NCBI GenBank assembly: GCA_002104905.1
Contig: MCFE01000358.1
Coordinates: 1 to 64,000, forward strand
Reading direction: 5' to 3'
Length of the DNA stretch: 64,000 nt
Source: Basidiobolus meristosporus CBS 931.73
Lineage: Eukaryota > Fungi > Basidiobolomycota
Of the stretch, positions 7,515 through 63,869 are shown piece after piece. The notes under the pieces are model-generated. The model was not told where the DNA came from and did no database searches. It saw only the letters and a program-made list of their open reading frames with translations. A program made the translations under genes and the position numbers. The stretch's first letter is position 1; each line of letters begins with the position of its first letter.

Positions 7515-10500
7515 ATGTCCAATATTCCTCACATGCCGAATGAACTTAGTCCTGACAATCCAGTGGACTCTGCAAATGTTCCAAAAGAAGTCGAAGCTGC
7601 CAACCTTCCTAATATGCCTGGGAATATCCCTCTGACAGAACCCTCGGTTAATGCCCCTCAAGAGCCTGTTCAGCAGATGAACGAGGCAATACAGGGAAAA
7701 GCGGATAAAGAGCCGCCCCAGCCCAATACCCCTATACATTCTTTTCAGCCCGGTGTTTCTCCTGAGGAAAAAGTGAAGATTGAGGAAGCCGCTGGTACGG
7801 TTTTGCCAAATACTCCCCTTTCAAGTGACATAAATGAGACCAAGAGCGTAGCCTCCGACACGAAGTCTGAGAAATTTGGTGGCCCAAACATCCCTCTAGA
7901 ACGGTCCGCTACCGCCTACACTACACAATCACTTCAATCTACCGATTCCACAGCCACCGTTGGCTGGAAAGAATCAAACGAAAGCTTTTTGAGCTCCTAC
8001 TCTGGTCAAGAATGGCAAAACGTGGCCTGCTTAGTCGCCATCACTTTGGTGACTTACCTTTTGGCTAAACTTGGACTCGGCCTAGCTTGGTGTCTAGTTG
8101 TGTTGGCTTTCGTTGGTAAGTGGTATGAGCCATGCGTAACGTGGCCCAAATGAGGTATTGATGTTTCTCATTCCCAGCTAAATACTACATCAACTCCGTA
8201 AAAAGATTCCGAAGAAATGCCAGAGATGACATCTCTCGTGAACTAGCCCTTACCAAGGTAAACTCTACCACAAAATCGTTTGCGCCCTGTGACATCGACT
8301 AAATCGCTCTGATAGCTTTTCACGGACACTGAGTCGACCGAATGGCTGAACATGTTTCTCAATAAATTCTGGCTAATCTATGAGCCGGCACTCTCCGCTA
8401 CAATTGTTAGTATTGCTGACGGAATCCTGGCGGTTTCCACTCCTGCATTCTTGGATTCTCTTCGACTCTCCGAGTTCACTTTAGGAACAAAAGCCCCAAG
8501 AGTCGAGTCCGTCAAGACCTTCTCCAACGAGGACGACGAAACGGTGGTAAGTGACCACCCTCGCTAGCATCGTACTCCAAGCTCAAAATACCTAATTGCT
8601 ACAATAGGAGATGGAATGGGAGGTTTCGTTCACACCCAATGATCTCCTGGACCTTACCAAGAGCCAGCTAAGGAACAAAATCAACCCAAAGATAGTCTTG
8701 GAGGTCCGTGTGGGCAAAGGATTTGTTGGGGCCGGAATACCTATTCTTGTGGAGGATATCTCATTCAATGGTCGCATGAGAGTGAAGATGAGACTCATGA
8801 GCAGTTTTCCGCATATGCAGTCCGTGGACTTGTCGTTCATAGAGCCACCCAGCTTTGACTACATTTTGAAGCCCCTCGGAGGCGAGACGTTTGGCTTTGA
8901 CATAGCACACATCCCTGGGCTTTCCGCATTCATCCGAGAGCAGGTCCATGCTATACTCGGCCCGATGTTGTATAATCCAAACGTTTTCACCTTGAATATG
9001 GAGCAAATAATGAGCGGTGTAGATACTGAGGCTGCTATCGGTGTCCTTAGACTCCATATCCGCAATGCTAGAAACCTGAAGAACCTGGAAGTGCTCGGGC
9101 TCTCTGACCCGTATGTCAGACTACATATCAACAACCGAGCTGAGCTGGGCCGCACCTCTTACAAACAAAACACTCTGAACCCAGTCTGGGACGAAACCTT
9201 CTTTATTCTAATTCACGATCTAAACGAAACACTCTCCCTGGAAGTTTTCGACAAGGAGGAGATCAAGAAAGACCGAAGCCTAGGCACTGCTACCTTCAAC
9301 ATGGCCTGTTTACTGGATGAGCCGGAGCAAGACCATATCATTGCCAAGGTGATCAGAGAGGGTGGCAAGGAGCATGGAGAGGTATGCTTCGATGCAACTT
9401 ACTGTCCTGTCGTTGAGCCCACCGTTCATGAAGATGGCACGATTACCCAAATCGAATCCAATCAAGGAATCCTCAAAGTGTTTGTCCACCAGGCGAAGGA
9501 TCTAACCCACAAAGCCTCTACTAAGCATAGCCCCTACTGCGTGGTGAAGCTCCGCGGAAAAACGATTCTCACCACGAAGGTTCTGAAGCGAAAGTCCAGT
9601 CCGGTGTGGGAAGATGCTGGCGAGGTGTTCGTCAACGATAAATCAACGGCAGTTCTATCATTTGATGTGCTGGACTCTCGAGGTGTTGCTGTGGACCCCG
9701 CGCTTGGCAAGTTCAGCATTGGCCTGAACGAAGCGCTCAAGAGGATGGAGGAACAGAATCAATGGTTCCCCCTCCGTGGCCATTATTCAGGGAAACTCCG
9801 AGTTTCTTTTGTCTGGTCACCTATCGAGCTGTCGAGCGAGATCATCCCCGCTGGCCATCTTGCCCCACCTACGGGTGTGGTAAGGCTAGATCTTATCGGA
9901 GCCAGGAACTTGAAGAATGTCGAAAAGATCGGCAAATCCGATCCATACGTAGTCGTCTCAGTCTCCGGAAGAACCCTCACTCGAACCGAGGTGATTGGCA
10001 ACAACTTAAATCCCGAATGGAACGAAACTCATTACATCGGAATCCGTAGCCCCCGCGAGGTGATCTACTTCGATGTGTATGATTTCGACAAAGTGGGGAA
10101 AGACAGGCGTTTAGGCTCCGCTTCAGTGCCTGCCAAGCAGATATTTGGTGAGCAAATCGGCAAGAATCGATGGGGACCCGGGGCTCCTCAAGAACTCAGA
10201 CTCGGCCTCCACCTGGAAGGCAAGGAAAGAGGGGAGATTCATCTGAAGGCCAGCTTCAATCCATTGATCGAGCCAGTGTCCCCTAGTGATCCAGTTACGC
10301 CCGAACCGGTGGAGGGTTCGGAGGTAGTAGCCCCTACCCAAGCTCTCAAGAAACCCATTGATTACACCCAATACACTACCGGTTTGTTGTCCGTCACACT
10401 GGGCCACACCCAAGGCATGAAGCGCCAAGTGGAAACCCCATACGCCGATGTGCTTCTCAACAACAATGAATACAATGTTGTTCATAGAACCAAGGCCAAG

Positions 10501-12315
10501 AAGAGGGCCACCAACCCTGCCTTCGACGAGCAGTGCGAGGTGTTTATTCAAGAAGCTCAATTTGCCACGATCTCCGTTTGTGTTCGTGAGATGAATGATG
10601 AGCGAACCGTCATCGCACGTAAAACCATTGAGGTGCCCGACATCTTGGAGCGACTATCGAAGGAGGACCCGACAGATGGATACTGGTACGAATTTGACAA
10701 CACCGATGGCAAGATCCTTCTCAAGTTCAAATTCTCCCCAGTCGAGATAAGCATAGATGAGTCGGAAAGTTGGATAAACAAGGGCCTTGTCAATGTGAAG
10801 ATCATCAAGGCTCAGGGGCTACGTGCCGCCGATTCCTCCGGAACAAGCGACCCATATGTGCAGGTTAAGGTTAACGACGTGAAGATCTACAAGACCAAGG
10901 TCATCAAGAAAACCCTTTCCCCTGTATTCAACGAGGAGTTCACAGCCCAAATTCACGACCGCAACACCTCGTCGTTAATCTTCCACGTGTATGACTGGAA
11001 TCAAGTTCAGTCCAGCGAACAACTTGGCTACTTCCAGATCAACACCAATAAGCTTGAGCCATTCACCTGGGTTCAAGATAACTTTGAGCTGTCAGACGGT
11101 ACTGGAACGCTTACCCTAAGAATGATGTTTAGACCTGAACATGTAGGCCGGATGACTACCGATCGCAAACAAACTTTCCACGCGGCCACCAGGAGCGCTA
11201 TTGGCAAAGGAGTTGGTGGAGCTACCAAGGTTGTTGGCGGTACCATTGGAGGCATCGGGAAAGGAGTTGGTGGGCTGTTTAGTAAAGGGAAAAAATCCAC
11301 TAGCCGCGATCCGATTGTAGCTCCCCCTGCCAATGCGAATGTTCCTTCGGAGGTACTATCCACTAGAAGCAATAGTATTAGCAGCAACTTCAGCCATACA
11401 TCAAATACCCCCAATATGCCGAGCATGCCCAATATGCCGAACATGCCCAATATGCCAAACATGCCAAACATGCCCAACATGCCTAGCATGCCCGATACAC
11501 CTAACGTTCCAGTTGACTCGCAAATCGATGCCGCCACCAAAGAGGTACCAGCAATTCCTGACCCAGGCGACTCAATCCCTCCTCCTTCCGTACACAATAT
11601 GCCCATTGAGAGCAAAGCGGCCCCCACTGTTAACGAAAGTGTCCACGAGCATGAGGAACCAAGTGAAACACCTACGAATCCCATTACTCCGGTGTCTACC
11701 CCACTTCGAATCAACGAGCCAGATGTTACAGCCATTCCAATCTCAGCTCCACAGTCGCCTGTTACAGATGTATCCAACAACAGACTCTCCATCGCCAATA
11801 TGGACGACCTGAGTGAAGTCTCGGGAGAGAGTGGCGGCTTAGAGCACTCGAGTGATAATTTCGGCGAGCAAGGGATCTTGACGGTTACTATCGTACAGGC
11901 CAAGGATTTAGTTGCCGCGGACAGCAACGGGTTGAGTGATCCTTATGTTCGCGTTCGCAGCGGTCGAAAGGCACTCTACAAGACCAAAGCCATCAAAAAG
12001 ACACTCGAGCCGAAATGGAACGAGACTTTCACCATTCCACTGAACGGCACACCCATGAAACTCAACTTCTCAGTTCGGGACCGCAACCTTCTTCAAGATG
12101 CCTACTTGGGAGAATACGAAACCAACGTGTGGGAACAGATTCATCAAACCAACCCTGCCACCGAGGGAAATTGGGTTCAGCTGAGGAAGATCGATCATGG
12201 CAAACTACTGCTGAAATTCACCTTCACCCCGAGCACCACCTCACCTAAATCAAGTGAATTCTCGGAATCCCCTAGGAAGAAACTGGGCTTTAGTTCTTTC
12301 CGAAGGAAGCATTAG
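7515..12315 (+). CDS. TCB: Tricalbin / extended synaptotagmin (hydrophobic hairpin, SMP domain, ~5 C2 domains); exons ~7515-8115, 8178-8257, 8316-8546, 8608-12315
   Basis: ESTEWLNMFLNKFWLIYEP SMP start, repeated SDPYV C2 motifs, canonical introns. Confidence 0.95.
11405..11503 (+). repeat. 9-bp coding minisatellite (aayatgccn) encoding (PNM/PSM)n in the tricalbin linker
   Basis: TPNMPSMPNMPNMPNMPNMPNMPNMPSMPDTPNVP. Confidence 0.9.
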
Positions 12316-12664
12316 GCTAGCATCAGGCTCAGCATCAATACGAAAGCCTATTTCGCCTATTTTCGCCTATTTTCGCCAGAAAAGTTTAGACCTGATCATT
12401 CATCCAAGTCATTGAACTAATTTTGTTATTTAATCTATATAAACACTACAACACCATAACCCCAATCTCGAAGCCCAATCAATCTCCATATATCTTGGTG
12501 GCCACGGTTTAGATCGATATGATTGACCGCATAGATAGACCGATAGATTGACCGCATATTTTGAAGTTACCCAATATTATCATCAAGATTAGACTGACAA
12601 AATCCACTTGGGCAGTTGCTATCCGTCTTTTATATTTTACTTTTACTGCACTGACCGTAGCGAA

Positions 12665-14432
12665 ATGCAGGCAGCTTTAGTGCGATTACCAAGAGTGAAC
12701 GCCGCATTAACCAAAAATAGATTAGACCAACTGCTGCGTCGGAACTCGGCTTCAGTAGCTGTAAAGAGGGAAACGGAGGCTGAACAAAAAGCTAGACTGG
12801 CTCGCAATTACTATGTTGTTCGTACCCCCCAGAGTCACACGTTTCGTGTTAACCTAAAAAACTCCCCCAATCTGGTGGGTATTCGGTCGACCAGAGGAAT
12901 GCGGGATTACAACGAGGATCGATACAAAACGTTAGCCGTAAAGCTCCCTGACCAGTCTAATCAACACTTATACTTTGGAGTCTTTGACGGGTATGGGTGC
13001 TTGGCAAGCTCGAAAGTTCATGCATAAACTGTGACTTATCCCTTACTTTCTTTTCTCCAGCCACGGTGGTTCGCATAGTGTAGACTACCTTTCAGCCCAT
13101 CTGCACGAAAAGCTCGAATCCATGACCAGCAACGACGCACAGATGATCGTGGAGGCCTACAGAGAATTTGGCATCCGTTGGTCCAAGTATACTCCAGGCA
13201 TATATCGGACCATTACTTTACCAGCGACTCTACTCTCGCCAACAACCCACGGAAAAAAAGCTTTCTCTTGAGCAGCGCTTGGTGCTGTCCTTTTTGAAGT
13301 CCGACCTGGACATCACGAAGGTCTTGAGATATCACGATGGCTCTACCGGATCCATTGCTCTCATCGAACCAATGAATGGAAACCCTTTTTGGGCTTCTCC
13401 TCAGCTGGCCATTACGGTCTCTCACGTAGGAGACACTAGGTAGGTTACGTACTGAAGGCTGTTGATGCGGGCCACACACTTAGCTCCTGTCTTTTGTAGG
13501 GTTATCCTCTGCAACACCCAGAACGGAAAAGCCGACACGCTGACCACTGACCATCATCCAAGCATTAAAAAGGAATTCGACCGGATCCGAAAGTACGGCG
13601 GCTTTTTCACTAGAGATTCGTTCGGAGAAGAAATGACGGTCGGCCAGTTTGCCAACACCAGAGCCTTTGGCGACCCGATTGGTAAACGCTTCGGCGTCAT
13701 TGCCGAGCCAGACATCATCGTACGCAAGGTGTCTGGGGAGGAGGTGGCTTTCATGGTCCTTATTACCGACGGCGTGTCTTCGGTCATGACAGATCAGGAG
13801 ATTGTGGATACCGTAAGTGGATCTATCGAAGCCTTTCATCGAGCATTCGTCTAACTTGGCCTTAGGTCAAGACTTGCCCCGACCCAACCACCGCTGCTGC
13901 GCGGATCGTCACTTACGCCGAGCAGTTTGGCTCCGATGACAACATCACCGCCATGGTAAGTTCACCCCCCCCCAACTGTCTGATGGCACGCTGTACCCAC
14001 CTCTTGTCTCCGTGGTAGGTGATTCGACTCCCTGGCTGGGGAGCTCAGATGCCGGATCTTTCGGCGGATATCCGCAAGCACAGATTGGAGATTTCATCTT
14101 CGAGAGGGCCTCGCATGGGCTCTGGAATCTATAACAACCTGGTCGAGGCGGCGAACGTCAAGGAGAAGACGATCAAGACTCTCTTCGAGGACGGAGTGTT
14201 CCACGAATTATCCGAGGACCAGCTCTACGACCAAATGGCCAAGTTTGGAATCAGGCTAAGCATCGACATTGGGATGCTTCCTGGGGATGAGCCAGAGCAT
14301 GACCGGTCCGAGCAAGACGTCGTGGCGATGTTTTATTCGGTGCTGAATAGACCGCGGACCTCGGTATTGACTGTGGGAGATGTAAAGAAAGCATGGACCT
14401 TGCTGGGGGTGACCGCCACCACGAACCAGTAA
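12665..14432 (+). CDS. PTC6: PP2C-family protein phosphatase, Ptc6/Ptc4-like (probably mitochondrial), multi-exon; unresolved frame change near 13170-13260
   Basis: RGMRDYNEDR, YFGVFDG/HGG, SHVGDTR, ANTRAFGD, VLITDGVS, GSDDNIT motifs; basic N-terminal presequence-like segment. Confidence 0.85.
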
Positions 14433-14698
14433 CCCATGCGCACAGCACCCGTATTCGATCTTGTACCATAGATGTGGCATTAATCAACCCATTTCTGTTC
14501 TAAGAACCCCACCTGTGAATACCGAAACCTACTGTAAATACGTATTCACTCATCACATAGTAACTTCATTAAACACGCGAAACGGCTGTAATCACGAAAT
14601 GATGCATGTTTGGGTTGCCCGCAGGCGGGAGAAATGATTATTCACAAAATATCTCGTAATATACACTGGAAATCTACATGATCTACCCGCACCCGCAC

Positions 14699-17109
14699 TC
14701 ACGCCGGCCCTGGGCTAGAGGCGAGTTTCGGGGGCGGGAGGTTGGGTGGATGCGTCGATGTGTTCGGATGGTCAGCATTGGCTTTTCTGGCCTTTAACGA
14801 TTTCAGCTCGTTCTTCAGATGCTTCAGCAATCTTCTCTCCGCCCGACGAACCTCTTTTTCCTCCGAGGGGAAACTCGTCGGGGTCTCTCGCGCAAGGAGT
14901 CGCGTCTGAAGCTTCCATTTGGCCATCTCCAAGGTGGCGTTGATCCATTCCTTTCTGTAATTGGTTTTCTCCATCTGGCAGCGTTCATACTGCGCCTTGT
15001 AATGGTCCCGCTCCTTTTTCAGCTTGGCTAGCTCCTGATGCAGGTGCTTTTCATACTGCTCCCGGTTACTCTGCTGTAGCCTCGTATTGTCTAGGGTTCT
15101 TTCGTAATGGAGACACTTCTCGCTCAGCTCTCGGATGCACTTCTCCGTTTGCTGGATATGCGCTTTCAGGCTGCGAACTTCATCGGTCAAGATATCGATC
15201 TGCTTCGCTCTAGATTCCTCGACCTCCTTCTGGTAGGCACATTCGTGTGCTCGCTCCTCGTTTATGGGGACATAGGGGGAGGCGGCTCCGACGAACGTAG
15301 ACTGTTTGGCTGCCGCTTTAGGAACCGGATGAAGTGGGCTTGCGTGTGATATTTCGGTCGCGACATGTGACGGCATTGGCGAGTAGTGGGAGAATGCTAG
15401 AGGCGTATTCTCCAAGCCAGGTTGAGAAATCGTAAAACCGATAGGAGCGTCCAGGTCCTTGACAAATCCCACATCCAGAATAGACAGTAGCACGCGTAGA
15501 TTGGCGATTGGAACCTGAGCAGTAGGAGAGATCGGTAAGACGAAATCGAACGAATCAGCAAACTGAGGGACCCCTTCGACTCTCACGCCTCGGTCTCTCT
15601 CACGTAGCACCTTCTCGAAATTCAGGATACCGCTGCCCAGATGACGGATCCCCTCTGAATTCTTGAGCTTACCAAGGAGGTTGATATACAACGGTGTGGA
15701 GAGCAGCCTATCCAACAGACGATTGGGTGAAGAGAAAACCTCCATTGTGTAGTAGGAGTTTGGCAAAAACACGTCTGTATTCGAGGGAACCTCGATGCTG
15801 GGCTCCGTGTATACGGTCTTGGCGGCGGTAAACCAGTCATAACTATATTCTAGATATGCGTCTTCGAGGTGAGCGTTGTCCGTTGAGATAGAAACAAGGT
15901 GAATGGTGACGATAAAGTGATGCGCCAACATATGGCCATTGATTCCTGGCTCGACGAGCGAGTGTATCACCTCCTTCTCAACCAAAGACAGGCTACATCC
16001 GATCTGCGGCTCGCTAACGTCTCCTGCCTCCTCTACCTCGGGGACTCTTTTAACAGCGTACAGCCCTTCAAAATAATGCGGCTCTCCGGAAGAGGCTTGA
16101 AACACATCATTGACAGATACTCTAGCGCACCCGACGACCTTGTCTTGGCAAAGGTGGATGTGTATCAACGGGTGAGTGGCGAGGTATTCTTGTATCTCGC
16201 TCAAGCTGGATCGAATGTTCACGAAGACCCGTGTGGGCGACCAGGCGGAGGAGTCCATGAAGTTGGTGAATTTCTCGGTGATGATTTCTCTGTCGAATAG
16301 CTTGAATTGAAAGTAGAAGGGTGGCTCGTGGGTGCGCGAGGTGCTCGAAGCTTCGAAGAGCGATGCGAGATTCTGAAAAAACGAGATTCCGAAAAAGAAC
16401 ATAAACTCGGTGTCCCCAGCTCCAATTTGGTACTCCTTTTGCCTGGTCAACAGATTCGTTGTTATCTGTGCAGAGGGTTCCCCCACGTTGGCTTGTGTCA
16501 GAGTATGGGCGATAGATATCCTTGGAGAGCCTCTATCTACTGCGGGGGTTTCTATTGGTTTGGGTTCCGGTTTGGGGTCCGGTGTGGGTACCGCTCTACT
16601 TGGTTGCTGTATGGTTTGAGTGCTTTCTTTAGTAAACTCGTGCCTGGGTCCGGCCTGGAAGAGTATCCGAAGTTCGGGTCTGACCCCATTTTGCCGCTGT
16701 CCTTTCTTGACATTCACCAATGGAAACCACTTTGGTCTAGGTTCGGAGGTTGGGCTTTGCACTTGACGCATATCCAGAACCACGAAGCCAATCTCTTCCG
16801 CAACATTACTCTCCTTGCTCACGGAAAGACAGGTAAGTTTGACGGTGGCTTTCTGGGTACGAAGTAGATGTAGGGTCTTGTGCTCTAAAGTCCACTCAAG
16901 CTCTGTATCCCATAGTGGTCTTGGTGTTTGCTCAACTCTTTCAGTGCCAAGTGATTCATTGTAGAATCTCCCCTCCACGAAGATCCCATTACCTCGTTTA
17001 CGTATAAAATGCCGACCTAATCGTAGAGTTAGCTAATATAGTGGCCGGAGGTTATGCACCTGCTTCGCTCACCTTCTAATACTGTCGCCAGAACTGTACA
17101 TAAAACCAT
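14699..17109 (-). CDS. CEP120: CEP120 orthologue (three C2 domains plus a shortened coiled coil); exon 1 17073-17109, intron 17017-17072
   Basis: VLEGRHF..VEGRF..TELEW..LRTQKATVKLTC (C2A); YQIG..IRSS..IHLCQ (C2B); HHFIV..VFLPNSY (C2C); YRKEWINATLEMAKWK near the C-terminus. All parallel recalled animal CEP120 motifs, in the same order. Confidence 0.85.
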
Positions 17110-17309
17110 TTGACCTAAATGAACAGCACACCACCTTGGCAAATGGATGTTATCTAGGAAACACTTGATCCAGTGGTGAATACGAAGGGATTGTTTTGAT
17201 TTCCTGATGTAGTAATTCATAGCAGTTTAATTGATTGGTCATCCAAAAAAGAGTAGATACATGTCGTTGATTACATTATGCAGTGCGGATATAAAACATA
17301 GCTTGTCAG

Positions 17310-18801
17310 TTATAGGGGATTCCTCAGTTTGGCATGGTTTCTGGCTACCTGAAGATCATCGAGCAGCCTTCTGAAGGCACCGTCTTCCACTCGAGTATAG
17401 AGAACAAACATAAGGAAGAATAGAAACGAGTAAATGGCAAAGCCAACCATGAACACATCAAACACCGCAATGGCCCATGATGGGGGTGTAATAATGGAAC
17501 AAACGACCAAGAGAATAACCCATACAATCAATCCCACCGCAAACCGCACGATATATCCAGTGTTTTTGCGATGTACACTCTCAAGTCCGGAGGTGAGAAG
17601 TTGGTTCAGCTCCCCGAAAATGTCAACGTCCCATGTAGCAGAAGAGTATTCTGTTGCCCCCATCGCACCTCTTGGTTTTGGCGTGATGCTAAACGTGGAG
17701 CAGACGCCAAAATGATCAGAGTACGAGCACTTCAAGGACACAACTGGCTCGGTAAGACACACTTGAGAGGCTGTGCATCGCAAGTTAGCCGTGCGCGCAT
17801 AGAAGATGTAATCCAGTCTTTCGCCGGGATGCTTCTGATTGGGGTTTCCTGAGAGCGTGTTTGTGGGAATAATGGAAGTCATCCCGTTACAACGGGCGAT
17901 CTCAACCATGCTTAGACTCGGGTCATATGGAGGATGAATAACGCCCGACCCATTGATCTCATCCCATGAATCGGTCAGTCCAGTATATGATTCGATCATC
18001 TTGATGACAAGGTTGTCTGGGATGCTGTTATAATCGCCCAGCTGTAATGAGTGAGTATTGCACTGGAACGCGAACACAATACTGACAATGTAATTACCGC
18101 GATGACGTGATTTCCATTGCTAAGTGCATCTTTCAAGACCCTCGACAACTCCCAGCCCTGAGCTGCGCGATGAAAACCGTTGTCGTCGTTTGGACTGTAT
18201 TGCGCGATCAGCTGTCAATTCGTTGAGCACATGTACATAGTGATACTAGCACGTCAGGAAAACCCTTACATGCGTATTGTACACTTCGATGATCCCCCCA
18301 TCTGGATATTCCAGGTGACAGCAGCCTACCGCCTTGGCAACGTACCAATCGCCCTGCAGTATTTTCAGCGGGTTGCCGTTTAGTGAATATGGCTGCACGT
18401 ACGATTTCACAATGGGGAACTTGGAGAAAATGGCCAGGCCTGCGCCGAAGATACCCCTAAACAGGAAGGGGTTGTTAGAGGAGTGCCCGCTGGGTGCGCC
18501 TTGGTGTTGAAAGGGTTTACGTATGGAAAAAGTGTGCGTAGGGCAGCGAATGCTTGGTTTTATGTTTCACCATTTCAAAGTCCTCGTAGACCCAGATTTC
18601 CTGTAGACCCACGAGGTCGTAGTCATGCTCGACCAGATAGTGAGCAATGGCCTCCAGGCGTTGCTTTCGTTTTTTAGACACGAATTTCAGTCCCCTGGAA
18701 GGAAATAGAACGTTCAGTCTGTTAGTAACCTTGCATCAAGCAACAGGTGTGTTCTCATTGTACCAGCAATTGAGGGTCAATACTCGAAGTGTGCTTGCCA
18801 T
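17310..18801 (-). CDS. ISC1: Inositol phosphosphingolipid phospholipase C / neutral sphingomyelinase, multi-exon
   Basis: MASTLRVLTLNCW/GLKFVSK, DLVGLQEIW, ERLDYIFY, SDHFGV, two C-terminal TM segments. Confidence 0.9.
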
Positions 18802-18994
18802 GACTGAAAAGAGTGGAGCTTTGCCAAGAATGGAAATGGAGCCTATCTATCTTCTCAACAGCTGTCGCCTAATATAATATATTGATTGACATTGTCCACC
18901 AAAAGAAAACGCATGTCAATCAATGGTCAAACACAATTGGATTATAAGCTAATTAAATGATGTCCAAACCACCTGGTCGTCAGGATACATGCAC

Positions 18995-19002
18995 CAGTCA
19001 CA
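18995..19002 (+). promoter_or_regulatory. HomolD box (CAGTCACA) in the ISC1/RPS28 divergent promoter
   Basis: Exact match to the fungal ribosomal-protein promoter element, ending ~107 nt upstream of the RPS28 ATG. Confidence 0.7.
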
Positions 19003-19108
19003 TGATGCGGTTGTCTGATCGGGAACTGGATTTGGGAATAAAACTAGTTGAATATACCTCGGGTCACCCCCTTTACCCATTTGCCCACCGCGAACGGACT
19101 TCTTTCAA

Positions 19109-19369
19109 ATGGTACGTGTATCCAGTAAACCATCCATCCATCCAGCTCGCTAATCCTTGTTGGCTTAGGAAAAACAAGCCCCCGTCAAGCACGCCAAAGT
19201 TATCAAGGTCCTCGGCCGTACTGGATCCCGTGGTGGTGTCACCCAGGTTCGTGTGGAGTTCATGGACGACACCTCTCGCTCCATCATTCGTAACGTCAAG
19301 GGACCTGTCCGCGAGAATGACATCTTGGTCCTCATGGAGTCCGAGCGTGAGGCCAGACGCCTTCGTTAA
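19109..19369 (+). CDS. RPS28: 40S ribosomal protein S28 (ATG-only first exon, intron 19112-19168)
   Basis: [67 protein letters not shown]. Confidence 0.97.
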
Positions 19370-20032
19370 ACCATCTTCAATAAAATGGAAATAAACCGCA
19401 TTCATCACTGTTCCATTCACATGTCTCCCTATGGCTTGCACATGCACATTTGACACTAGATTTGTGTTTCGTCCACTGGATAGCAAATGACGTGATGCTT
19501 TGGCACCATGGCCTTCAATTCCTGCACTTTGACCCAACCCTCCCTCCATCCATATCCATATCCATATCCCTAGCCTTAACCCTAACCCCACCCCGACCCG
19601 ACCTCTCACCTGTGGAGGTGATTTAATCAAAACAAGCCAAACCAAGCATAACCCGATACTGGCCCTATGCAATCGATAAAAAAATAGAAAATCGACGGAA
19701 TCCAGTGAAATCCACTGAAATCAAAGATATTCCATGGATCTGGTCTACGCCGAGCAAATAGAAAACGTTCCAATTCTGTGTTAAACACTGGCTCTTATGT
19801 CAATCGAGCTGATACGAAAGTATTCCAATCATCGTGATTCCTTACTTTTTATTATACTACTTGCTCCACCTACTTCCCCCTCCAAGCCTTATTTTTACTC
19901 TTGAAAGGGTTTATCAAAGAACCTCAATTATTTCTCTCCCTCCTTGGACTGGGCGCCCGTTTCGCTGAACTGAAACACAACCAACCCTGACGACAATAGT
20001 GGCTCTTCTTTGCTTGACCCGCACTTGACATA

Positions 20033-22566
<2,534 letters not shown>

Positions 22567-27537: not shown

Positions 27538-28849
27538 ATGAGAATCAACAGTCCTTTGGGACAAGTACTCCTCGTGGGTTTCGTCTGCTTCGCATGCCCC
27601 GGCATGTTCAACGTCATCAACGGTATGGGCGCCGGTGGTCAGATGGACGATAACACAGCCAAGAACGGAAATGTCGCCCTTTACTCTTGCTTTGCCGTGT
27701 TCGGATGCCTAGGTGGTGGTTTCTACAACATTCTCGGTGGTCGTCTTTGCTTGTGCCTCGGTGGTTTGACTTACGCTTTGTACTCTGGCTCGCTCCTCTA
27801 CTACAATGAGACCAAGAAGCCGCATTCGTGATCATTGCCAGTGCCATCCTTGGTGTTGGTGCTGGTATTCTGTGGACAGCTCAAGGCGTGGTGATGATGT
27901 CGTATCCTGCGGAAGATCAGAAGGGCCGCTGTGTCGGTCTGTTCTGGATTCTGTTCAACCTTGGGTGGTGTGATGGGAGCCTTCATTCCATTCGGCCTCA
28001 ACTTCCACTCTGACAAGGGAGCCGTCAGCAACAGCACCTACCTCGCCTTCCTCGTGATCATGATTCTCGGCGCTCTCCTCGGACTCATTCTCTTGCCCCC
28101 TGGCAAGGTGATCCGCGATGATGGCAGCAGAGTAGTCGTGAAGAAGTTCACCAACATCGGCGGCGAGATCGTGGACATCCTCAAGCTCTTCACCAACAAG
28201 TACATGCTCCTGCTCACCCCGTTGTTCATCAGCTCCAACTGGTTCTACTCCATACCAGTTCGGCGCCGTGAACGGAGTGTTGTTCAACCTTCGCACCCGT
28301 TCCCTCAACAACGCCCTGTACTGGGGATCTCAGATGCTTGGTGCCTATGGCTTGGGAGCCTTCCTTGACAACCCTCGCTTCGGTCGTCGTGCCAGAGCTG
28401 TGTATGGACTGGCCATTGTTGGAGCGATCTTCTCGGCCACCTGGGCCGGAGGTCTTGCCCTTCAGCTCCAATACACTCGTGAGGATCACCCCTCGAACAT
28501 CGACTTCATCGACCACCCCAGCGAGTTCTGGCCCAAGTTCATCCTGTACATCTTCTATGGCATGTGTGATGCCATGTTGCAAACCTATGCCTACTGGGTC
28601 ATGGGAGCCTTGTCGAACGACTCGTCAGTGCTTGCTCGCTACGCTGGCTACTACAAGGGCATCCAATCAGCCGGAGCCGCCATTGCCTGGAGAATCGATG
28701 CTGTTGGCACTGCCTTCCTCACCCAGCTGATCATCAATTGGGGACTGTTCACTCTGTCTCTTCCATTCACCTACTTCGTAGCACGCGAGGTCAAGGAGAC
28801 CTGTAACGATGGGGCTGAAGAGAAGGGTGAAGTTGCTGACAAGGAGTGA
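27538..28849 (+). CDS. NGT1: Array copy 2, three 1-nt indels (~27820, ~27961, ~28250)
   Basis: Full-length match to copy 1 once the indels are corrected. Confidence 0.75.
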
Positions 28850-29588
28850 ACAGGATATAAATTCATACTTGGTTTTATTTTTAGCCATATCTGTAATTAC
28901 TTTAATCGTACTTAACTAAATGTAATAAAGCTAGCGTGTTACATCGAACCTAATTTCAATTCCAGTACCAACGTACTAATTTCTAGCAGACAAAACGCTT
29001 TCGGTGTCCCGGCTGATTACAGTGATTAGTGGTAGCGTAATGCTGGAGATAACCTTCTATAACAGATTGTTTGGTCAACATCAATTTCTTCGAAATCATT
29101 GGTGTATATTGTCGGAGCATGGCAAATACCTTTCACTGGAATCTAGCCGTAAAAACCATTTCAACTCCGCACGCCACTGGTCACCAAAATAGAATTCATC
29201 AAATCCAACATTACACCAACTTCAATTTAGCTATTTCTAAAGCAGAACATAACTATGACGCTCGGCACATCCCGTAACCCATCAAATGATCTCTGGAAAC
29301 ACAACAGTGGCTTGTAGTCTGGTGACACGAGAGGGACGTTCCACCATGAAGCTTATTCCGGACAATCACTTCGGTTCACCAAATCAAATAAGTACAGATT
29401 TCAACATCGAAATTGGAATGGTCCAATTACCAAAATACCTTGGTTACTAAGACTGCTTATGTACCTAATACTACAGTAGCTTATGTGGATTAGCCACTCG
29501 GTGCATCGACGGTCGCTACCAAGTATATAAGACTGGGAGTAATGATATGTGATTATCAAATATTCACTCTCAATTGATAAACTAAATA

Positions 29589-30901
29589 ATGAGAATTAAC
29601 AGTCCTTTGGGACAAGTACTCCTCGTGGGTTTTGTCTGCTTCGCATGCCCCGGCATGTTCAACGTCATCAACGGTATGGGCGCCGGTGGTCAGATGGACG
29701 ATAACACAGCCAAGAACGGAAATGTCGCCCTTTACTCTTGCTTTGCCGTATTCGGATGCCTAGGTGGTGGTTTCTACAACATTCTCGGTGGTCGTCTTTG
29801 CTTGTGCCTCGGTGGTTTGACTTACGCTTTGTACTCTGGCTCGCTCCTCTACTACAACGAGACCAAGAAGCCGCATTCGTGATCATTGCCAGTGCCATCC
29901 TTGGTGTTGGTGCTGGTATTCTGTGGACAGCTCAGGGTGTGGTGATGATGTCGTATCCCGCGGAAGATCAGAAGGGTCGCTGTGTCGGTCTGTTCTGGAT
30001 TCTGTTCAACCTGGGTGGTGTGATGGGAGCCTTCATTCCATTCGGCCTCAACTTCCACTCTGACAAGGGAGCCGTCAGCAACAGCACCTACCTCGCCTTC
30101 CTCGTGATCATGATTCTCGGCGCTCTCCTCGGACTCATTCTCCTTGCCCCCTGGCAAGGTGATCCGCGATGATGGCAGCAGAGTAGTCGTGAAGAAGTTC
30201 ACCAACATCGGTGGTGAGATCGTGGACATCCTCAAGCTCTTCACCAACAAGTACATGCTCCTGCTCACCCCGTTGTTCATTCAGCTCCAACTGGTTCTAC
30301 TCCTACCAGTTCGGCGCCGTGAACGGAGTGTTGTTCAACCTTCGCACCCGTTCCCTCAACAACGCCCTGTACTGGGGATCTCAGATGCTTGGTGCCTATG
30401 GCTTGGGAGCCTTCCTTGACAACCCTCGCTTCGGTCGTCGTGCCAGAGCTGTGTATGGACTGGCCATTGTTGGAGCGATCTTCTCGGCCACCTGGGCCGG
30501 AGGTCTTGCCCTTCAGCTCCAATACACTCGTGAGGATCACCCCTCGAACATCGACTTCATCGACCACCCCAGTGAGTTCTGGCCCAAGTTCATCCTGTAC
30601 ATCTTCTATGGCATGTGTGATGCCATGTTGCAGACCTATGCCTACTGGGTCATGGGAGCCTTGTCGAACGACTCATCAGTGCTTGCTCGCTATGCTGGCT
30701 ACTACAAGGGTATCCAATCAGCCGGAGCCGCCATTGCGTGGAGAATCGATGCTGTCGGCACTGCCTTCCTCACCCAGCTGATCATCAACTGGGGACTGTT
30801 CACTCTGTCTCTTCCATTCACCTACTTCGTAGCAGCGTGAGGTCAAGGAGACCTGTAACGATGGCGCTGAAGAGAAGGGTGAAGCAGCTGACAAGGAGTA
30901 A
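29589..30901 (+). CDS. NGT1: Array copy 3, four 1-nt indels (~29871, ~30143, ~30281, ~30833)
   Basis: Full-length match once the indels are corrected. Confidence 0.75.
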
Positions 30902-49999: not shown

Positions 50000-50480
50000 T
50001 GAAACCGTAAAGTTGAGTCTAGTGATGTTACTATTCCTAAAGAGGGATTCTTCTGCACTCACTATGCCAATTTATTGCTGTAACAGTTTTGGGGATTCTG
50101 TGGCTTTCACTTGATGATTTAGTGAGTGGTAAATTGGGATACATACTTTTCCAGGGTCTTAAAAAGATTCCATGTAAAATATGCCTAGAGAGGTCTCAAG
50201 TGTTGTAGGAACTTGGAGGTATTGAAAGTAGTTGGGAAAATAAGCATTGTATGTGGCTTTCAATCAATGATTTATTGGATGTAAAAACAGTGTTTATACT
50301 ACTGCATAGTGCTGGCAAAAAGCCTAAAGAATATGCTCAAAAAGGTCCCAAGAGCATGTCTGCAATATATGGGGCTGTTTGGACAGCTGTGAAAATCTTC
50401 AATATTTAGGTACCTGATATTTTAATGAGATATCATAAATAGATCCTGACAAGGAATCTGGTCAAAATTATCTATAATCC
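50000..50480 (-). mobile_element. Inverted relic of the copia leader/gag start
   Basis: The reverse complement matches 53330-53395, 54635-54670 and 63780-63830. Confidence 0.55.
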
Positions 50481-51393
50481 TCCTATAACAATAATCTTGT
50501 CCTGCAGGTGGTACACATATGCTTGGTTGCCACCACTTTTGCCTTGAATATCTCTTGAATATCTGAAAAATACTTTTTGTTACTGAGCTAATATATTCCC
50601 TTGTCCTGCTGGATTCTAGTCCCCTTTATAAGTGTAAAGTGTGTGCATCATGGCTGGGAGGTGTGTTACAATAGCCATATGGTTATTTTCTCTTCTCTTA
50701 CAGCATTGCATCAAAGTAGTCCTGTCCATGGGTAAACAGCTTGACACTCAACAACATAATACTATTATATCACTTTTTAGTTAATACTCATGTGAACTTA
50801 AGACAGTCTGATGTCTGAGGTATTACACCTACATGAATGTAAGATTCAATGATAACCCACCATAGTAAGCATCATAAATAAATCTGTGGCCCCAAACACA
50901 CATGTACATAGATTGCTATTTCCCCTTATGATTGACTCACTACCATATATATATGTCACCAAAAAATGAAGTAAAGTTGTCTGGTTCCCAACCATGCCCC
51001 ATGGCTGACAGTAGCGGAAGAATGTTTGAAGAACAGCTTGTTTCAATGTTCAGTACAACAAGCAAGGTTACAACCTAAAAAGGCCATGCTGACAGTGTGC
51101 ACTCTGAAGGTAATAATGTGGACTCCTTAGGCTCTTGGTCAAGTATGCAACTAAGAATCTCTTTGGAGCTGCAAGCTGTCCATAATTCTCAGGCGGATGA
51201 GAATGCAATCAATGCAGTACCTCCAGCAGAAGACCAACAAATGGCTATTGCAGCATCCCCACCAGCAGTGTTAGCAAGTAAGTTTTCAGCTTATACCAAA
51301 GCCTTAATAAGGCATTAGGTGCAGTGGCTAATAGGATGGATGCAATGGCTTGAGAAATCAGGAAATAGTCAAAAGCCAGGATGAGCAGACAAT

Positions 51394-52127
51394 AGACTTG
51401 TTCCGTTGGATAGTGCCACATTGAGCCATGAGTGCCAAATGATGCCATAGTGTGCCAGGGAGGCCAAGTGAGCCTATACTTGGCCACAGAGTGTGAAACA
51501 CAGCTCTGCATCTTCATGCAAAGCAGCCCCTGTGTTTCACCCATTGAGCTGGAAAAAATCCATTTTTTTACCTTTTTTTTTGAATCAATGTCATGCAGGA
51601 TGTGTAAGAGCACAAAAAGATATAAGACATGCATTGGGTACTCAATACCCATGGCACTCTGAATCTAGCTCCTGTAGCTTGTATCATGTCATAAAAATGA
51701 ACGGCACTATCTTGGTCCACTGGTACTATCTGGCACTATAAGTGCTTTATATAGGTTTAACTTTAGGGCTAATATTTAAGTATAGTGCCAGATAGTACCA
51801 GTGGACCAAGATAGTGCCATTCATATTTGTGACATGATACAAGTCACAGGAACTAGATTCAGAGTGCCATGGGTGTTGAGTATCAGATGCATGTCTTCAG
51901 TCCTTCTGTGCTCTCACACATCCTGAACAATATTGATTCAAAAAAAAAGGTCAAAAAATGGATTTTCTCCAGCTCAATGGGTGAAACACAGGGGCTGCTT
52001 TGCATGAAGATGCAGAGCTGTGTTTCACACTCTGTGGCCAAGTATAGGCTCACTTGGCCTCCCTGGCACAGTATGGCATCATTTGGCACTCATGGCTCAA
52101 TGTGGCACTATCCAACAGAACAAGTCT
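51394..52127. mobile_element. Foldback / long-TIR non-autonomous DNA element, 734 bp, ~347-bp arms, 40-bp spacer, AAT target-site duplication
   Basis: AGACTTGTTCC...GAACAAGTCT ends; the arms are reverse complements; AAT at 51391-51393 and 52128-52130. Confidence 0.85.
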
Positions 52128-52462
52128 AATATGTGTAGAGCAATCAATTTCCCAGGTAGAGAATCAGTATCTCTGCTGCAAAGAAGGAACTCTAGTAGCT
52201 CAATGTCACAGTCAAGAACTGAGTCATCCCACAATATGACAGCAGAGGAACACTGTAAATTCTTTGAAGCACAACAACAGTGCCCAAAGATAAAGCCCCC
52301 AGAGCAACCTATTGCAGCATGGAAGAGAGAGACTGTCATCTTTATACTGAAGCCTAAAAGTCAAATGTCACTGAAGATTGGTGAAGTCATTGAGTGTTAT
52401 AATGAAGAGTAGGCTAGTTCTCAGGAGGACATAAGAAGACTAACATGCCATCACCTGAAGGC

Positions 52463-53024
52463 TGTTGCAATATTCTATGGAGTATTGGAAGTGATGTGGA
52501 GAACCAGAGTAAATACATGCTACTCACTTGTAAATTCATTGATTAAAAGTATGGCATTGATAGTATTGACAAAGAAAGGCAAACAAACATGTCATGTTTA
52601 TTAAGGAATATCCTAAGAATATATGTGCACAATTTGGGGTCTTTTGGACAACTTGGAGTAATGTTATAACATAGACTTGTTCCATTGTGACATTGATCAT
52701 AGTGCCAGAAAGTGCTGTATATGCTGTTATTAATTTGCTATTTTAGGGTCATATGCATGTCAATTTTGATCCCAAATTGGCACAGTATGGCACCATCTGG
52801 CACTCTGTGGCATGATCAGGCACCATCTGGAATGCTATGGCACTATTGGGCACTATGATCAGCTGAAATGATGGAACAAGTCTTATGTGTACCTGATAGC
52901 TTGGTAAAAGTATTATTAGTAAGTCCTGAGCGGAAAGCTGGCCAGGACAGAATGCTAATAACTGAATAAGATCTATGTGACTAAGTTACCATAATATATA
53001 GGTGACAGCTTCATAATTATAACA
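52463..53024. mobile_element. Solo LTR (TGTT...AACA) with a 5-bp AAGGC TSD, itself carrying a MITE
   Basis: AAGGC at 52458-52462 and 53025-53029; an empty site is visible in the paralogous sequence at ~62170. Confidence 0.8.
52673..52883. mobile_element. MITE of the AGACTTGTTCC family (211 bp)
   Basis: Same termini as 51394-52127; 10-bp periodic GGCAC array. Confidence 0.85.
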
Positions 53025-53224
53025 AAGGCTGGCATACCAAGGGACCATCAGGAACTGAAGGCCAGGAAGAATGCTCATAACTTGCTCCATCAGCATTATC
53101 ATGGATTCAAACAAGCAAACATATTATGGGTTAGCATTAGTATGGTTACAAAGTATCTCAAGAATTGCATAAACTATCAGAGGCAGAAGTGCTATTGTAA
53201 GAATTTGTAATCCCACCTGAATGT

Positions 53225-54430: not shown

Positions 54431-54499
54431 CGGAGCATTCAACACTTTGCACACCAAAAAGTTCTTTTTAACCAATGTCAAGAAGTTCCACCTAAATAC

Positions 54500-56660: not shown

Positions 56661-56880
56661 ATATTAGGCAAGTACCTGCGCCAGTACCCGTGACACATGA
56701 TCAACCAGTGTCACCATCCCTACCACTTCCATACCATTTATGGTATCCATATGTTACAGAGGTTTCAGAATACTGATTCCTGATTGGATGGATGTGCTGT
56801 GCCTCTTAGAACCTTCTGGCACCTACCTGGAACATTCTTGGGTCATTCTGATGCCATTAAGATTTCAATTGATATCCAGA

Positions 56881-60100: not shown

Positions 60101-60779
60101 GTTTTCCCAATCAATTCTAATATGTGCAAGATTCTTACAGCAAGTACAAGGGTGCTATAGTCAAAGACCAGCAGGGCCAAAAGCTCCAAACTAGCAGCAA
60201 AGAGACATCAGGTAGCTGGAAGAGTGCTAACAAGAGACATGCAAGTAGAAACAGATGCACAAGTGCAATAATTACCAAGGGAAAAGTATAGTTCCAGTTA
60301 ACAGGTACTCAGTCACAGTAGCACTGAAGGACCTGCCAAAGATCAAAACCAGCAGCTTCCTCAGGATCCAGGCACAACCAGGGCTGAGAGCACAAAGGAA
60401 GTGGCAAAGAAACTACAGGTTGCAGTAAGAGTGCTGGTAAGGGATAAGCTGGCTGAAATAGATGCATCAGTTCAGCATTTAGCATGGAGAAAACATGGTA
60501 CAATACAAGAGGCACTTAGAAAAAAGAATTGTGAAAGACCTGGCAGTGATAAAGGTATAATGAGATGGAAAGGAGTATACTCAAGCAATAGACAGGGAAG
60601 GGTGAGAAAAAAGCTGCAGTTCTCACCCATTAATGCTGTCACCTCAGAGCAAGCTAAGTCCTATAATAGCCAAGAAGTACTGATAAGACCACACTTGCTT
60701 ACTCAAGAGTTAAAAGCCCAGCAAATTGAGCTACATTCTGGTGAGGTGGATGGACTGGAAATTGGAAACCAAGATTTTC

Positions 60780-63840: not shown

Positions 63841-63869
63841 TTAGTAGAGTGGAAGTCTTTTAAATGTAG

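What the first reader, a model, noticed from the sequence alone, without database searches (positions are those of the whole stretch)
14699..17109. Intact centriole gene CEP120 in a fungal genome
All three C2 domains and the C-terminal helix motif are retained, but the coiled coil is much shorter than in animals. CEP120 is a daughter-centriole/basal-body protein that I do not expect in Dikarya, which lack centrioles. If the host is non-flagellated (e.g. Basidiobolus, whose spindle organelle has a ring of singlet microtubules), this would be a molecular relic of a centriole-derived organelle. If it is a zoosporic fungus, it is expected.
Basis: partly seen in the sequence, partly recalled or inferred. 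Interest (0 to 1): 0.7.

Follow-up and report, generated by a model that had tools for sequence, protein, structure and literature searches.

The report
Tail-less CEP120 in non-swimming Basidiobolus
A fungus that has no flagella or canonical centrioles (Basidiobolus) keeps an intact, conserved copy of the centriole-building gene CEP120 that has lost only the tail used for making cilia. The same holds in two other non-swimming fungal groups, so the gene is a handle for testing what became of the centriole in land fungi.

Summary
Window 17109..14699 (minus strand) is an intact two-exon gene for a 784-aa CEP120 orthologue. Evidence: Pfam Cep120 domain 63 bits against a cut-off of 26; the eight best PDB sequence hits are all CEP120, with C2A, C2B and C2C in order; and the AlphaFold model shows three confident C2 sandwiches plus about 155 aa of helix.

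The host contig is MCFE01000358.1 of GCA_002104905.1. I take this to be Basidiobolus meristosporus from memory and from earlier scan notes. The nearest relative is B. ranarum, with six-gene synteny and the same intron. No gene is on record at this place in that assembly.

- **Not unique to Basidiobolus.** CEP120 is kept in every sampled Glomeromycotina and Mortierellomycotina, and the gene tree mirrors the species tree (Holozoa versus Fungi 100/100).
- **A tail lost with the flagellum.** All three non-flagellated lineages (0 of 42 proteins) lack the C-terminal helix that all 21 named flagellated-taxon CEP120s carry. In humans this region is needed for C2CD3 binding and ciliogenesis, not for centriole elongation. 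The microtubule-binding lysine (human K76) is invariant.

Best reading: a cilium-uncoupled microtubule and CPAP module acting at the nuclear microtubule-organising centre. A specific link to the Basidiobolus microtubule ring is plausible but unproven.

The parts
17073..17109 (-). CEP120 exon 1: ATG plus 12 codons and 1 nt, forming the first beta-strand of C2A
   Evidence: Read directly. The N-terminus matches B. ranarum P0001. The exon has the same length and phase in L002.
17017..17072 (-). Intron 1: 56 nt, GTGAGC...TTAG, phase 1
   Evidence: The position is conserved in B. ranarum, where the intron is 90 nt.
14699..17016 (-). CEP120 exon 2: 771 in-frame codons from 17014, plus the stop
   Evidence: Open frame. 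Pfam PF12416 E 4e-17.
16634..17014 (-). C2A domain (exon-2 residues 1-127), the tubulin and microtubule-binding domain in human CEP120
   Evidence: PDB 6ewl, 4icw and 6flj at E 6e-18 to 7e-16. Foldseek TM 0.79-0.83, rmsd 1.4-2.2 A. pLDDT >90. pN 0.09 against pS 0.74 versus B. ranarum.
16838..16840 (-). Codon of Lys59 (exon-2 numbering; Lys72 of the full protein), equivalent to human K76
   Evidence: It aligns to the K that is mutated to A in PDB 6flj. It is invariant in 55 of 55 CEP120s. K76A abolishes microtubule binding in human CEP120 (PMC3718976).
15950..16447 (-). C2B domain (exon-2 residues 190-355), carrying the Pfam DUF3668/Cep120 signature
   Evidence: Pfam 177-332. PDB 6ewg E 1e-7. 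Foldseek TM 0.80.
15455..15931 (-). C2C domain (exon-2 residues 362-520). It follows C2B directly; the ~100-aa linker seen in other CEP120s is missing.
   Evidence: PDB 6flk and 6ewp E 5e-12. Foldseek TM 0.73-0.80. Linker columns hold 0 residues in both Basidiobolus proteins.
15251..15451 (-). Disordered linker (residues 522-588), poorly conserved
   Evidence: pLDDT <50. 34% identity to B. ranarum.
14774..15256 (-). Shortened coiled coil (helices 587-710 and 717-747). It aligns to sturgeon CEP120 residues 699-740, 821-877 and 897-927.
   Evidence: About 80 aa (sturgeon 741-820) and the terminal helix (951-991) are absent.
14921..14959 (-). Conserved Y-x3-W-x7-A motif of the CEP120 coiled coil (Y686, W690, A698)
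   Evidence: Y686 and W690 are invariant and A698 nearly invariant (>=90%) in the 13-sequence alignment. The 57-column block around the motif is fully filled in both Basidiobolus proteins and in nearly all of the 55 sequences.
14433..14698 (-). 3' intergenic space down to the convergent PP2C gene. It holds no exon for the missing C-terminal helix.
   Evidence: Three-frame translation and motif scan. A tail-helix HMM run on six-frame translations gives E >1.

Best explanation
This is the vertically inherited orthologue of the centriole protein CEP120 in Basidiobolus (assembly GCA_002104905.1), kept under purifying selection in a fungus without flagella or canonical centrioles.

It is a 'short form' of 784 aa. 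It retains these parts:
- the tubulin/microtubule-binding C2A domain with its critical lysine;
- C2B and C2C (C2C lies in the region that binds CPAP in humans);
- the part of the coiled coil used in humans for self-association and centriolar targeting.

It has lost these parts:
- the C2B-C2C linker;
- about 80 aa of coiled coil;
- the C-terminal helix, which in humans lies in the part needed to bind C2CD3 and build appendages and cilia.

Inferred mechanism: the protein dimerises through the remaining coiled coil. It sits at the nucleus-associated microtubule-organising organelle. There it promotes or stabilises short microtubules through C2A, probably together with a CPAP/SAS-4 homologue. On this reading it is the elongation half of the centriole programme, uncoupled from ciliogenesis.

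Shown here: identity, architecture, conservation, loss of the tail, and phylogenetic distribution. Inferred: localisation, partners and function.
For: Identity:
- Pfam PF12416 at 63.3 bits against a cut-off of 26.
- The top 8 PDB sequence hits are all CEP120, with the three C2 domains in order.
- The exhaustive HMMER search returned 181 hits at E <=0.001. All 31 that I looked up by name or Pfam are CEP120 or DUF3668 proteins or unnamed sequences, and none belongs to another C2 family. The best after Basidiobolus are chytrid CEP120s.
- The AlphaFold model has three C2 sandwiches at pLDDT >90 plus long helices. Foldseek TM is 0.73-0.83 to CEP120 C2A, C2B and C2C.

Host and vertical descent:
- The contig is MCFE01000358.1 of GCA_002104905.1.
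- The six-gene synteny tricalbin-PP2C-CEP120-Exo_endo_phos-RPS28-STE20 is shared with B. ranarum.
- The intron position is shared.
- The careful ML tree separates Holozoa from Fungi at 100/100 and recovers Glomeromycotina+Mortierellomycotina at 94/79.

Selection:
- The ORF is intact.
- C2A has pN 0.09 against pS 0.74. Domains are 57-82% identical and linkers 27-48%.

Function-bearing residues:
- The K76 equivalent is invariant in 55 of 55 sequences. K76A abolishes microtubule binding in human CEP120 (PMC3718976).

Tail loss:
- The tail-helix HMM hits 21 of 21 named flagellated taxa at E 1e-14 to 1e-22.
- It hits 0 of 2 Basidiobolus proteins (plus six-frame translations of both loci), 0 of 14 Glomeromycotina and 0 of 26 Mortierellomycotina.
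- Human CEP120 1-894 fails to bind C2CD3. The I975S mutation perturbs cilia but not centriole elongation (PMC6465297).

Untested leads: earlier scan notes report STIL-like, PLK4 and SAS-4/CPAP genes in the same genome.
Against: - There is no expression or localisation data.
- No gene is on record at this locus in the deposited assembly. This could mean weak transcript support, or simply a missed model.
- The stem branch is very long (2.0 substitutions per site), and overall identity to B. ranarum is 54% against 64-94% for neighbouring genes. Constraint may therefore be relaxed or changed.
- About 80 aa of the human localisation/dimerisation region (731-894) are missing, so targeting could differ.
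- The same gene persists in Glomeromycotina and Mortierellomycotina, where no centriole-like microtubule ring is known to me. A function independent of any centriole remnant is therefore equally compatible with the data.
- CPAP and other partners were not verified by me.
Confidence: 0.55

Rival explanations
1. CEP120 has been repurposed as a general microtubule or nuclear-positioning factor with no connection to any centriole-derived structure. It would be retained because large or coenocytic cells depend on coupling between the microtubule-organising centre and the nucleus. On this reading it says nothing about the Basidiobolus organelle.
For: The gene is retained in all sampled Glomeromycotina and Mortierellomycotina, lineages where I know of no microtubule-containing spindle organelle. 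All three lineages have long stem branches, consistent with a shift in function. The cilium-linked tail is lost. Mahjoub 2010 (PMC2958470) confirms only that Cep120 was previously linked to maintenance of neural progenitor cells and to a neuronal-migration defect.
Against: The retained parts are exactly those used in centriole elongation: C2A with K76, the region that binds CPAP in humans, and the targeting coiled coil. Earlier, untested notes list several other centriole-duplication genes in this genome, which would be odd for a lone repurposed protein.
Confidence: 0.33
2. A decaying relic: an evolutionary left-over that is no longer expressed or functional and is on its way to becoming a pseudogene.
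For: No gene is on record at this place in the assembly. It evolves faster than its neighbours. Parts have been lost.
Against: The 784-codon frame is uninterrupted, with canonical splice sites conserved in a species whose synonymous sites are saturated (pS 0.80). C2A has pN 0.09. Orthologues are intact across three old lineages comprising dozens of species. The microtubule-binding Lys is invariant.
Confidence: 0.04
3. Foreign origin: contamination, or horizontal transfer from an animal host. Basidiobolus lives in amphibian and reptile guts and is reported to have acquired foreign genes.
For: A paper title lists horizontal transfer in Basidiobolus secondary metabolism (PMC7466969, seen, not read).
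Against: The gene sits among fungal genes in synteny conserved between two Basidiobolus species. The tree places it with Fungi and excludes it from Holozoa at 100/100. The best non-Basidiobolus hits are chytrids.
Confidence: 0.01
4. The host has an undiscovered flagellated or centriole-bearing stage, and CEP120 does its ordinary job there.
For: Earlier untested notes list several centriole and cilium-associated genes in this genome.
Against: The CEP120 tail, which lies in the part needed for C2CD3 binding and ciliogenesis in humans, is missing. Basidiobolus is described as lacking centrioles (PMC6492006). The notes index holds no record of IFT or axonemal dynein genes, but that is weak evidence.
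Confidence: 0.02

Closest known systems
Human/mouse CEP120 (986-988 aa), a daughter-centriole protein that elongates centrioles with CPAP and SPICE1
   Same: It has the same order of C2A-C2B-C2C plus a C-terminal coiled coil. C2A is 31-36% identical with rmsd 1.4-2.2 A. The microtubule-binding lysine K76 is conserved. The coiled-coil segments aligning to 699-740 and 821-927 are present.
   Different: It is 200 aa shorter. There is no C2B-C2C linker, about 80 aa of coiled coil are missing, and the terminal helix is absent. That helix corresponds to about the last 40 residues, which include the ciliopathy site I975 by position (not aligned to human here). In humans this part is required for C2CD3 binding (PMC6465297). 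The host has no centriole or cilium.
CEP120 of zoosporic fungi (Blyttiomyces, Rhizophlyctis, Batrachochytrium, Spizellomyces and others; 870-1190 aa)
   Same: These are the closest non-Basidiobolus relatives (E 1e-47 to 1e-30, 26-32% identity). They fall in the same fungal clade in the tree.
   Different: The chytrid proteins keep the linker, the full coiled coil and the terminal helix. Those organisms have centrioles and flagella (PMC12659703).
CEP120-domain proteins of Glomeromycotina (~785-820 aa) and Mortierellomycotina (~1150-1500 aa)
   Same: These are non-flagellated fungi that keep PF12416 proteins with C2A, C2B and C2C. They also have lost the terminal helix. The Glomeromycotina proteins have a similarly shortened coiled coil and overall length.
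   Different: They share only 19-24% identity with the Basidiobolus protein. Each forms a separate long-stemmed clade. Glomeromycotina carry an 11-residue insertion in C2A, and Mortierellomycotina proteins are much longer.
Chlamydomonas UNI2, the proposed CEP120 relative
   Same: Mahjoub et al. (PMC2958470) discuss it as a possible functional orthologue that acts at basal bodies and the transition zone.
   Different: It was not compared here because no sequence was at hand. It acts in a flagellate.

Membership tests
CEP120 (Pfam PF12416, DUF3668/Cep120) | Match to the Cep120 family model above its curated threshold | tested here: met
   63.3 bits against a gathering score of 26, E 4e-17. B. 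ranarum orthologue 40.1 bits.
CEP120 (Pfam PF12416, DUF3668/Cep120) | Three consecutive C2 domains, each most similar to the corresponding CEP120 domain (C2A, C2B, C2C) | tested here: met
   PDB phmmer: the 8 best hits are all CEP120 and lie in order. Foldseek single-domain TM 0.73-0.83. The model pLDDT is >90 in all three domains.
CEP120 (Pfam PF12416, DUF3668/Cep120) | C-terminal coiled coil with the conserved Y-x3-W motif | tested here: met
   Helices 587-710 and 717-747. Y686 and W690 are invariant in the 13-sequence alignment. The coiled coil is shortened by about 80 aa.
CEP120 (Pfam PF12416, DUF3668/Cep120) | Microtubule-binding lysine of C2A (human K76) | tested here: met
   It aligns to the K76 position of 4icw and 6flj. 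It is invariant in 55 of 55 sequences.
CEP120 (Pfam PF12416, DUF3668/Cep120) | Orthology: nearest relatives are CEP120s and the gene tree follows the species tree | tested here: met
CEP120 (Pfam PF12416, DUF3668/Cep120) | Conserved C-terminal helix. This is universal in flagellated-taxon CEP120s but is not part of the Pfam definition. In humans it lies in the part needed for C2CD3 binding. | tested here: not met
   The tail-helix HMM gives E >1 in the protein, in B. ranarum and in six-frame translations of both loci, against E 1e-14 to 1e-22 in 21 flagellated taxa. This marks a variant and does not exclude homology.
CEP120 (Pfam PF12416, DUF3668/Cep120) | Localises to (daughter) centrioles, binds CPAP and promotes centriole elongation | not testable with these tools
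   These are properties of the human and mouse protein (PMC2958470, PMC3718976). Testing them needs microscopy and biochemistry.
Component of the Basidiobolus nucleus-associated, microtubule-containing organelle (centriole relic) | Protein resides in that organelle | not testable with these tools
   There are only the literature description of the organelle (PMC6492006) and my recollection of the ring of 11-12 singlet microtubules (McKerracher & Heath 1985, not retrieved).
Component of the Basidiobolus nucleus-associated, microtubule-containing organelle (centriole relic) | Retention is specific to lineages with such an organelle | tested here: not met
   CEP120 is also kept throughout Glomeromycotina and Mortierellomycotina.

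The most novel reading that the evidence does not exclude
Early land fungi did not discard the centriole programme when they lost the flagellum. On this reading, Basidiobolus, and possibly Glomeromycotina and Mortierellomycotina, still run a cilium-independent PLK4-STIL-CPAP-CEP120 assembly module. That module would build their nucleus-associated microtubule-organising body, so the Basidiobolus organelle with its ring of singlet microtubules would be a genuine, reduced centriole. The loss of the CEP120 tail in all three non-flagellated lineages (possibly a single ancestral loss) would be the molecular scar of uncoupling centriole assembly from ciliogenesis.
Probability: 0.3. Interest if true: 0.85.

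Novelty: new variant of a known kind. Interest (0 to 1): 0.66.

Why it matters
CEP120 has been described as conserved in organisms that have centrioles, basal bodies and cilia (PMC2958470). [quoted passage not shown]

The data here show something different. A selected, tail-less CEP120 persists in three non-flagellated fungal lineages. The part that is missing lies, in the human protein, in the region needed for C2CD3 binding and ciliogenesis (PMC6465297). This matters in three ways:
- It is a natural separation-of-function allele of a human ciliopathy gene.
- It gives a concrete molecular marker for testing the decades-old question of whether the Basidiobolus nucleus-associated organelle is a modified centriole.
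- It is a warning that proteome-based surveys can miss such genes, since no gene is on record at this locus in the assembly.

None of the 19 listed papers that mention both CEP120 and fungi (22 in all; checked by title and abstract, four read), and no paper pairing CEP120 with Basidiobolus, describes this.

Tried and rejected
- **Another C2 family (ferlin, extended synaptotagmin, RPGRIP1/fantom).** The language-model atlas ranked RPGRIP1-type C2 clusters (0.92) above CEP120 clusters (0.87). Foldseek gave ferlins low E-values, but with rmsd of about 26 A. Pfam, PDB sequence hits, the exhaustive HMMER search and single-domain TM scores all say CEP120, so this was rejected.
- **A 3' exon hiding the missing tail.** Three-frame translation of the 266-bp space down to the PP2C gene, a motif scan of the whole window and a tail HMM on six-frame translations of both Basidiobolus loci found nothing.
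- **Gene transfer from an animal.** Rejected by the tree.
- **dN/dS over the whole gene.** Synonymous sites are saturated (pS 0.80), so only proportions per region are reported.
- **Naming the host from the literature.** Searches for the assembly and WGS accession found no paper. The species name therefore rests on my memory, on earlier scan notes and on kinship with B. ranarum.
- **Joined two-exon protein.** All searches used exon 2 by reference (771 of 784 residues). Exon 1 was read by eye and compared with P0001.
- **Supplement of the chytrid centriole paper.** It held no mention of Basidiobolus or CEP120.
Full report
**What is in the sequence**

On the minus strand, a 759-codon open frame (16978..14699) extends upstream in frame to 17014. 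It is preceded by an AG at 17018-17017.
- A 37-nt first exon starts at the ATG at 17109 and ends before GTGAGC at 17072.
- The model is therefore exon 1 17109..17073, a 56-nt phase-1 intron, and exon 2 17016..14699. Together these give 784 codons.
- The annotated Basidiobolus ranarum protein P0001 (784 aa) reads across the same junction at its N-terminus.
- The B. ranarum locus has an intron at the same position and phase.
Everything below uses exon 2 by reference (771 of 784 residues).

**What it is**

- Pfam gives the Cep120 family model PF12416 at 63.3 bits, against a curated cut-off of 26.
- Against all PDB sequences, the eight best hits are all CEP120. They fall in order: C2A (residues 1-108), C2B (188-309) and C2C (363-520).
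- An exhaustive HMMER search of 1.84 billion representatives gave 181 hits at E <=0.001.
- After B. ranarum (E 3e-254) there is a gap to E 1e-47. The next hits are chytrid CEP120s (Blyttiomyces, Rhizophlyctis, Batrachochytrium, Spizellomyces, Phlyctochytrium, Synchytrium) and vertebrate CEP120.
- An AlphaFold2 model built from a 55-sequence alignment has three beta-sandwich domains with pLDDT above 90. It has two disordered linkers (131-179, 522-588) and helices at 587-710 and 717-747.
- Foldseek's credible matches, meaning single-domain matches with low rmsd, are CEP120 C2A, C2B and C2C with TM 0.73-0.83.
- Ferlins and extended synaptotagmins appear only as multi-C2 matches with rmsd near 26 A.
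- The language-model atlas ranked RPGRIP1-type C2 proteins slightly above CEP120 clusters. I discount this against the alignment-based evidence.

**Host**

- An exact-protein look-up places the window on NCBI contig MCFE01000358.1 of assembly GCA_002104905.1. Window coordinates equal record coordinates.
- I recall this assembly as Basidiobolus meristosporus CBS 931.73, and earlier notes of this scan use the same name. I could not confirm the name from a paper.
- Independently, the nearest relative is B. ranarum. The gene order tricalbin-PP2C-CEP120-Exo_endo_phos-RPS28-STE20 kinase is the same in both species.
- Basidiobolus is described as having mitotic organelles that incorporate microtubules but are not centrioles (Adl et al. 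2019, PMC6492006).
- In the gene table held for that assembly, nothing is on record between the PP2C gene (ends 14432) and the Exo_endo_phos gene (starts 17310). The word-index search also returned no self-hit.
- The gene therefore seems unannotated there. The tool warns that 'not on record' is not proof of absence.

**Is it alive?**

- The frame is intact.
- Against B. ranarum, synonymous sites are saturated (pS 0.80) while non-synonymous change is uneven.

| Region | pN | Amino-acid identity |
|---|---|---|
| C2A | 0.09 | 82% |
| C2B and C2C | 0.23-0.25 | 57-60% |
| Disordered linkers and tail | 0.33-0.53 | 27-48% |

- That is the pattern of a protein under purifying selection on its folded domains.
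- CEP120 evolves somewhat faster than its neighbours. It is 54% identical to B. ranarum, against 64-66% for three neighbours and 94% for a PP2C fragment.

- Two hits of similar length turned out to be from arbuscular mycorrhizal fungi, and one from Mortierella.
- Follow-up searches show PF12416 proteins in every sampled genus of Glomeromycotina: Diversispora, Rhizophagus, Funneliformis, Gigaspora, Dentiscutata, Racocetra, Geosiphon, Paraglomus, Ambispora and Entrophospora.
- They also occur in about 25 Mortierellomycotina species, some already auto-named 'Cep120 protein-domain-containing protein'. Pfam confirms them.
- A careful maximum-likelihood tree (33 rows, 870 columns) splits Holozoa from Fungi at 100/100. 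It recovers Glomeromycotina+Mortierellomycotina at 94/79.
- It places Basidiobolus as its own fungal branch with a stem of 2.0 substitutions per site. The other two non-flagellated clades have stems of 1.1-1.6, and the zoosporic clades 0.1-0.5.
- Descent is therefore vertical, with no sign of transfer from an animal host. Evolution accelerated on each stem and then slowed within each lineage.

**What was lost**

I mapped the protein onto sturgeon CEP120 (991 aa, close to human numbering). By this mapping the Basidiobolus protein lacks three parts:
- the roughly 100-aa C2B-C2C linker;
- about 80 aa of coiled coil (741-820);
- the terminal helix (951-991).

I built an HMM of that terminal helix from flagellated taxa.
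- It scores E 1e-14 to 1e-22 in all 21 named flagellated-taxon CEP120s. Three of these were not used to build it.
- It finds nothing (E >1) in 2 Basidiobolus proteins, 14 Glomeromycotina proteins, 26 Mortierellomycotina proteins, or the six-frame translations of both Basidiobolus loci.
- No hidden 3' exon exists in the 266 bp before the next gene.

**What was kept, and what the human data say**

- In human CEP120 the N-terminal 1-209 binds microtubules, and K76A abolishes this.
- Residues 416-730 bind CPAP, and 731-894 mediate centriolar localisation and self-association (Lin et al. 2013, PMC3718976).
- C2A binds tubulin and promotes microtubule formation (Joseph et al. 2018, PMC5990496).
- The K76 equivalent is invariant in all 55 aligned CEP120s, including all the non-flagellated ones.
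- C2C and the coiled-coil segments aligning to 699-740 and 821-927 are present.
- By contrast, C2CD3 co-precipitates with CEP120 1-986 and 416-986 but not with 1-894. The ciliopathy mutation I975S lowers C2CD3 binding and perturbs cilia without affecting centriole elongation (Tsai et al. 2019, PMC6465297).
- I975 lies 12 residues from the human C-terminus, inside the helix that is missing here. This is by position only, as I had no human sequence to align.
- The natural truncation thus removes the ciliogenesis arm and spares the microtubule, CPAP and elongation arm.

**Most likely mechanism (inferred)**

The protein is a dimeric, microtubule-binding factor acting at the nucleus-associated microtubule-organising body. 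There it promotes or stabilises short microtubules, probably with a CPAP homologue. It would be a remnant of the centriole-elongation module, uncoupled from cilium formation.

Earlier notes of this scan report STIL-like, PLK4, SAS-4/CPAP, CCDC77-like and TBC1D31-like genes elsewhere in this genome. They fit this picture, but they are unchecked AI notes and I could not test them.

The main rival is repurposing as a general microtubule or nuclear-positioning factor. It gains weight because Glomeromycotina and Mortierellomycotina keep the gene without any centriole-like ring known to me. Decay, contamination or transfer, and a cryptic flagellate stage are each poorly supported.

**Novelty**

- The family is known, and B. 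ranarum, Glomeromycotina and Mortierellomycotina proteins are already in public databases under generic or automatic names.
- No paper in the library pairs CEP120 with Basidiobolus.
- Of the 22 papers that mention both CEP120 and fungi, 19 were listed. None of them (checked by title and abstract, four read) describes a non-flagellated fungal CEP120.
- Mahjoub et al. describe Cep120 as conserved in organisms with centrioles and cilia (PMC2958470).
- I therefore rate this as a new variant of a known kind. It is a tail-less CEP120 typical of non-flagellated early-diverging fungi, of which this window holds an apparently unannotated member.

**Limits**

- There is no expression, localisation or partner data.
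- The species name was not confirmed by a tool.
- Only 31 of the 181 exhaustive-search hits were identified by name or Pfam. Other non-flagellated lineages may therefore also hold the gene.
- Absence in Dikarya, Mucoromycotina and other Zoopagomycota is inferred only from their not appearing among the named hits.

Noticed in passing
window 23400-50000 (+ strand): There is a head-to-tail tandem array of at least nine UNC-93-like MFS transporter genes (PF05978/PF07690). 436-aa ORFs start at 25477, 32377, 37525, 43138, 45653 and 48052, and there are variant copies near 28268-30840, 34594 and 40142. At least two copies encode the identical protein: the look-up for the 25477 copy returned the 32377 copy.
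   Followed up: partly
window 14433-17309: No gene is on record for the CEP120 locus in the gene table held for GCA_002104905.1, although both flanking genes are called. Proteome-based surveys of this assembly would miss CEP120.
   Followed up: partly
window 8611-22566 and L002:994-16809: The six-gene block tricalbin-like SMP/C2 protein, PP2C, CEP120, Exo_endo_phos, RPS28 and STE20/PAK kinase is collinear between this contig and B. ranarum JASJQH010007062.1. Amino-acid identities are only 54-66% for most genes, which implies deep divergence within the genus.
   Followed up: yes
window 50000-64000: GC content drops to 0.37-0.42, against 0.44-0.52 over the rest of the window, and few long ORFs are present. 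I did not examine this region.
   Followed up: no
P0164 (Paraglomus occultum, 906 aa) and P0160 (Sarcoptes scabiei, 759 aa): Public names look wrong for these CEP120-cluster members. They are called 'Cytochrome b-c1 complex subunit 8' and 'nuclear cap-binding protein subunit 1-like'. These are probably fused or mislabelled gene models.
   Followed up: no
alignment A1, columns 47-57 (C2A): All Glomeromycotina CEP120s share an 11-residue insertion (consensus TISPDSNSIL.) in the first loop of C2A. It is absent from Basidiobolus, chytrids and animals.
   Followed up: no
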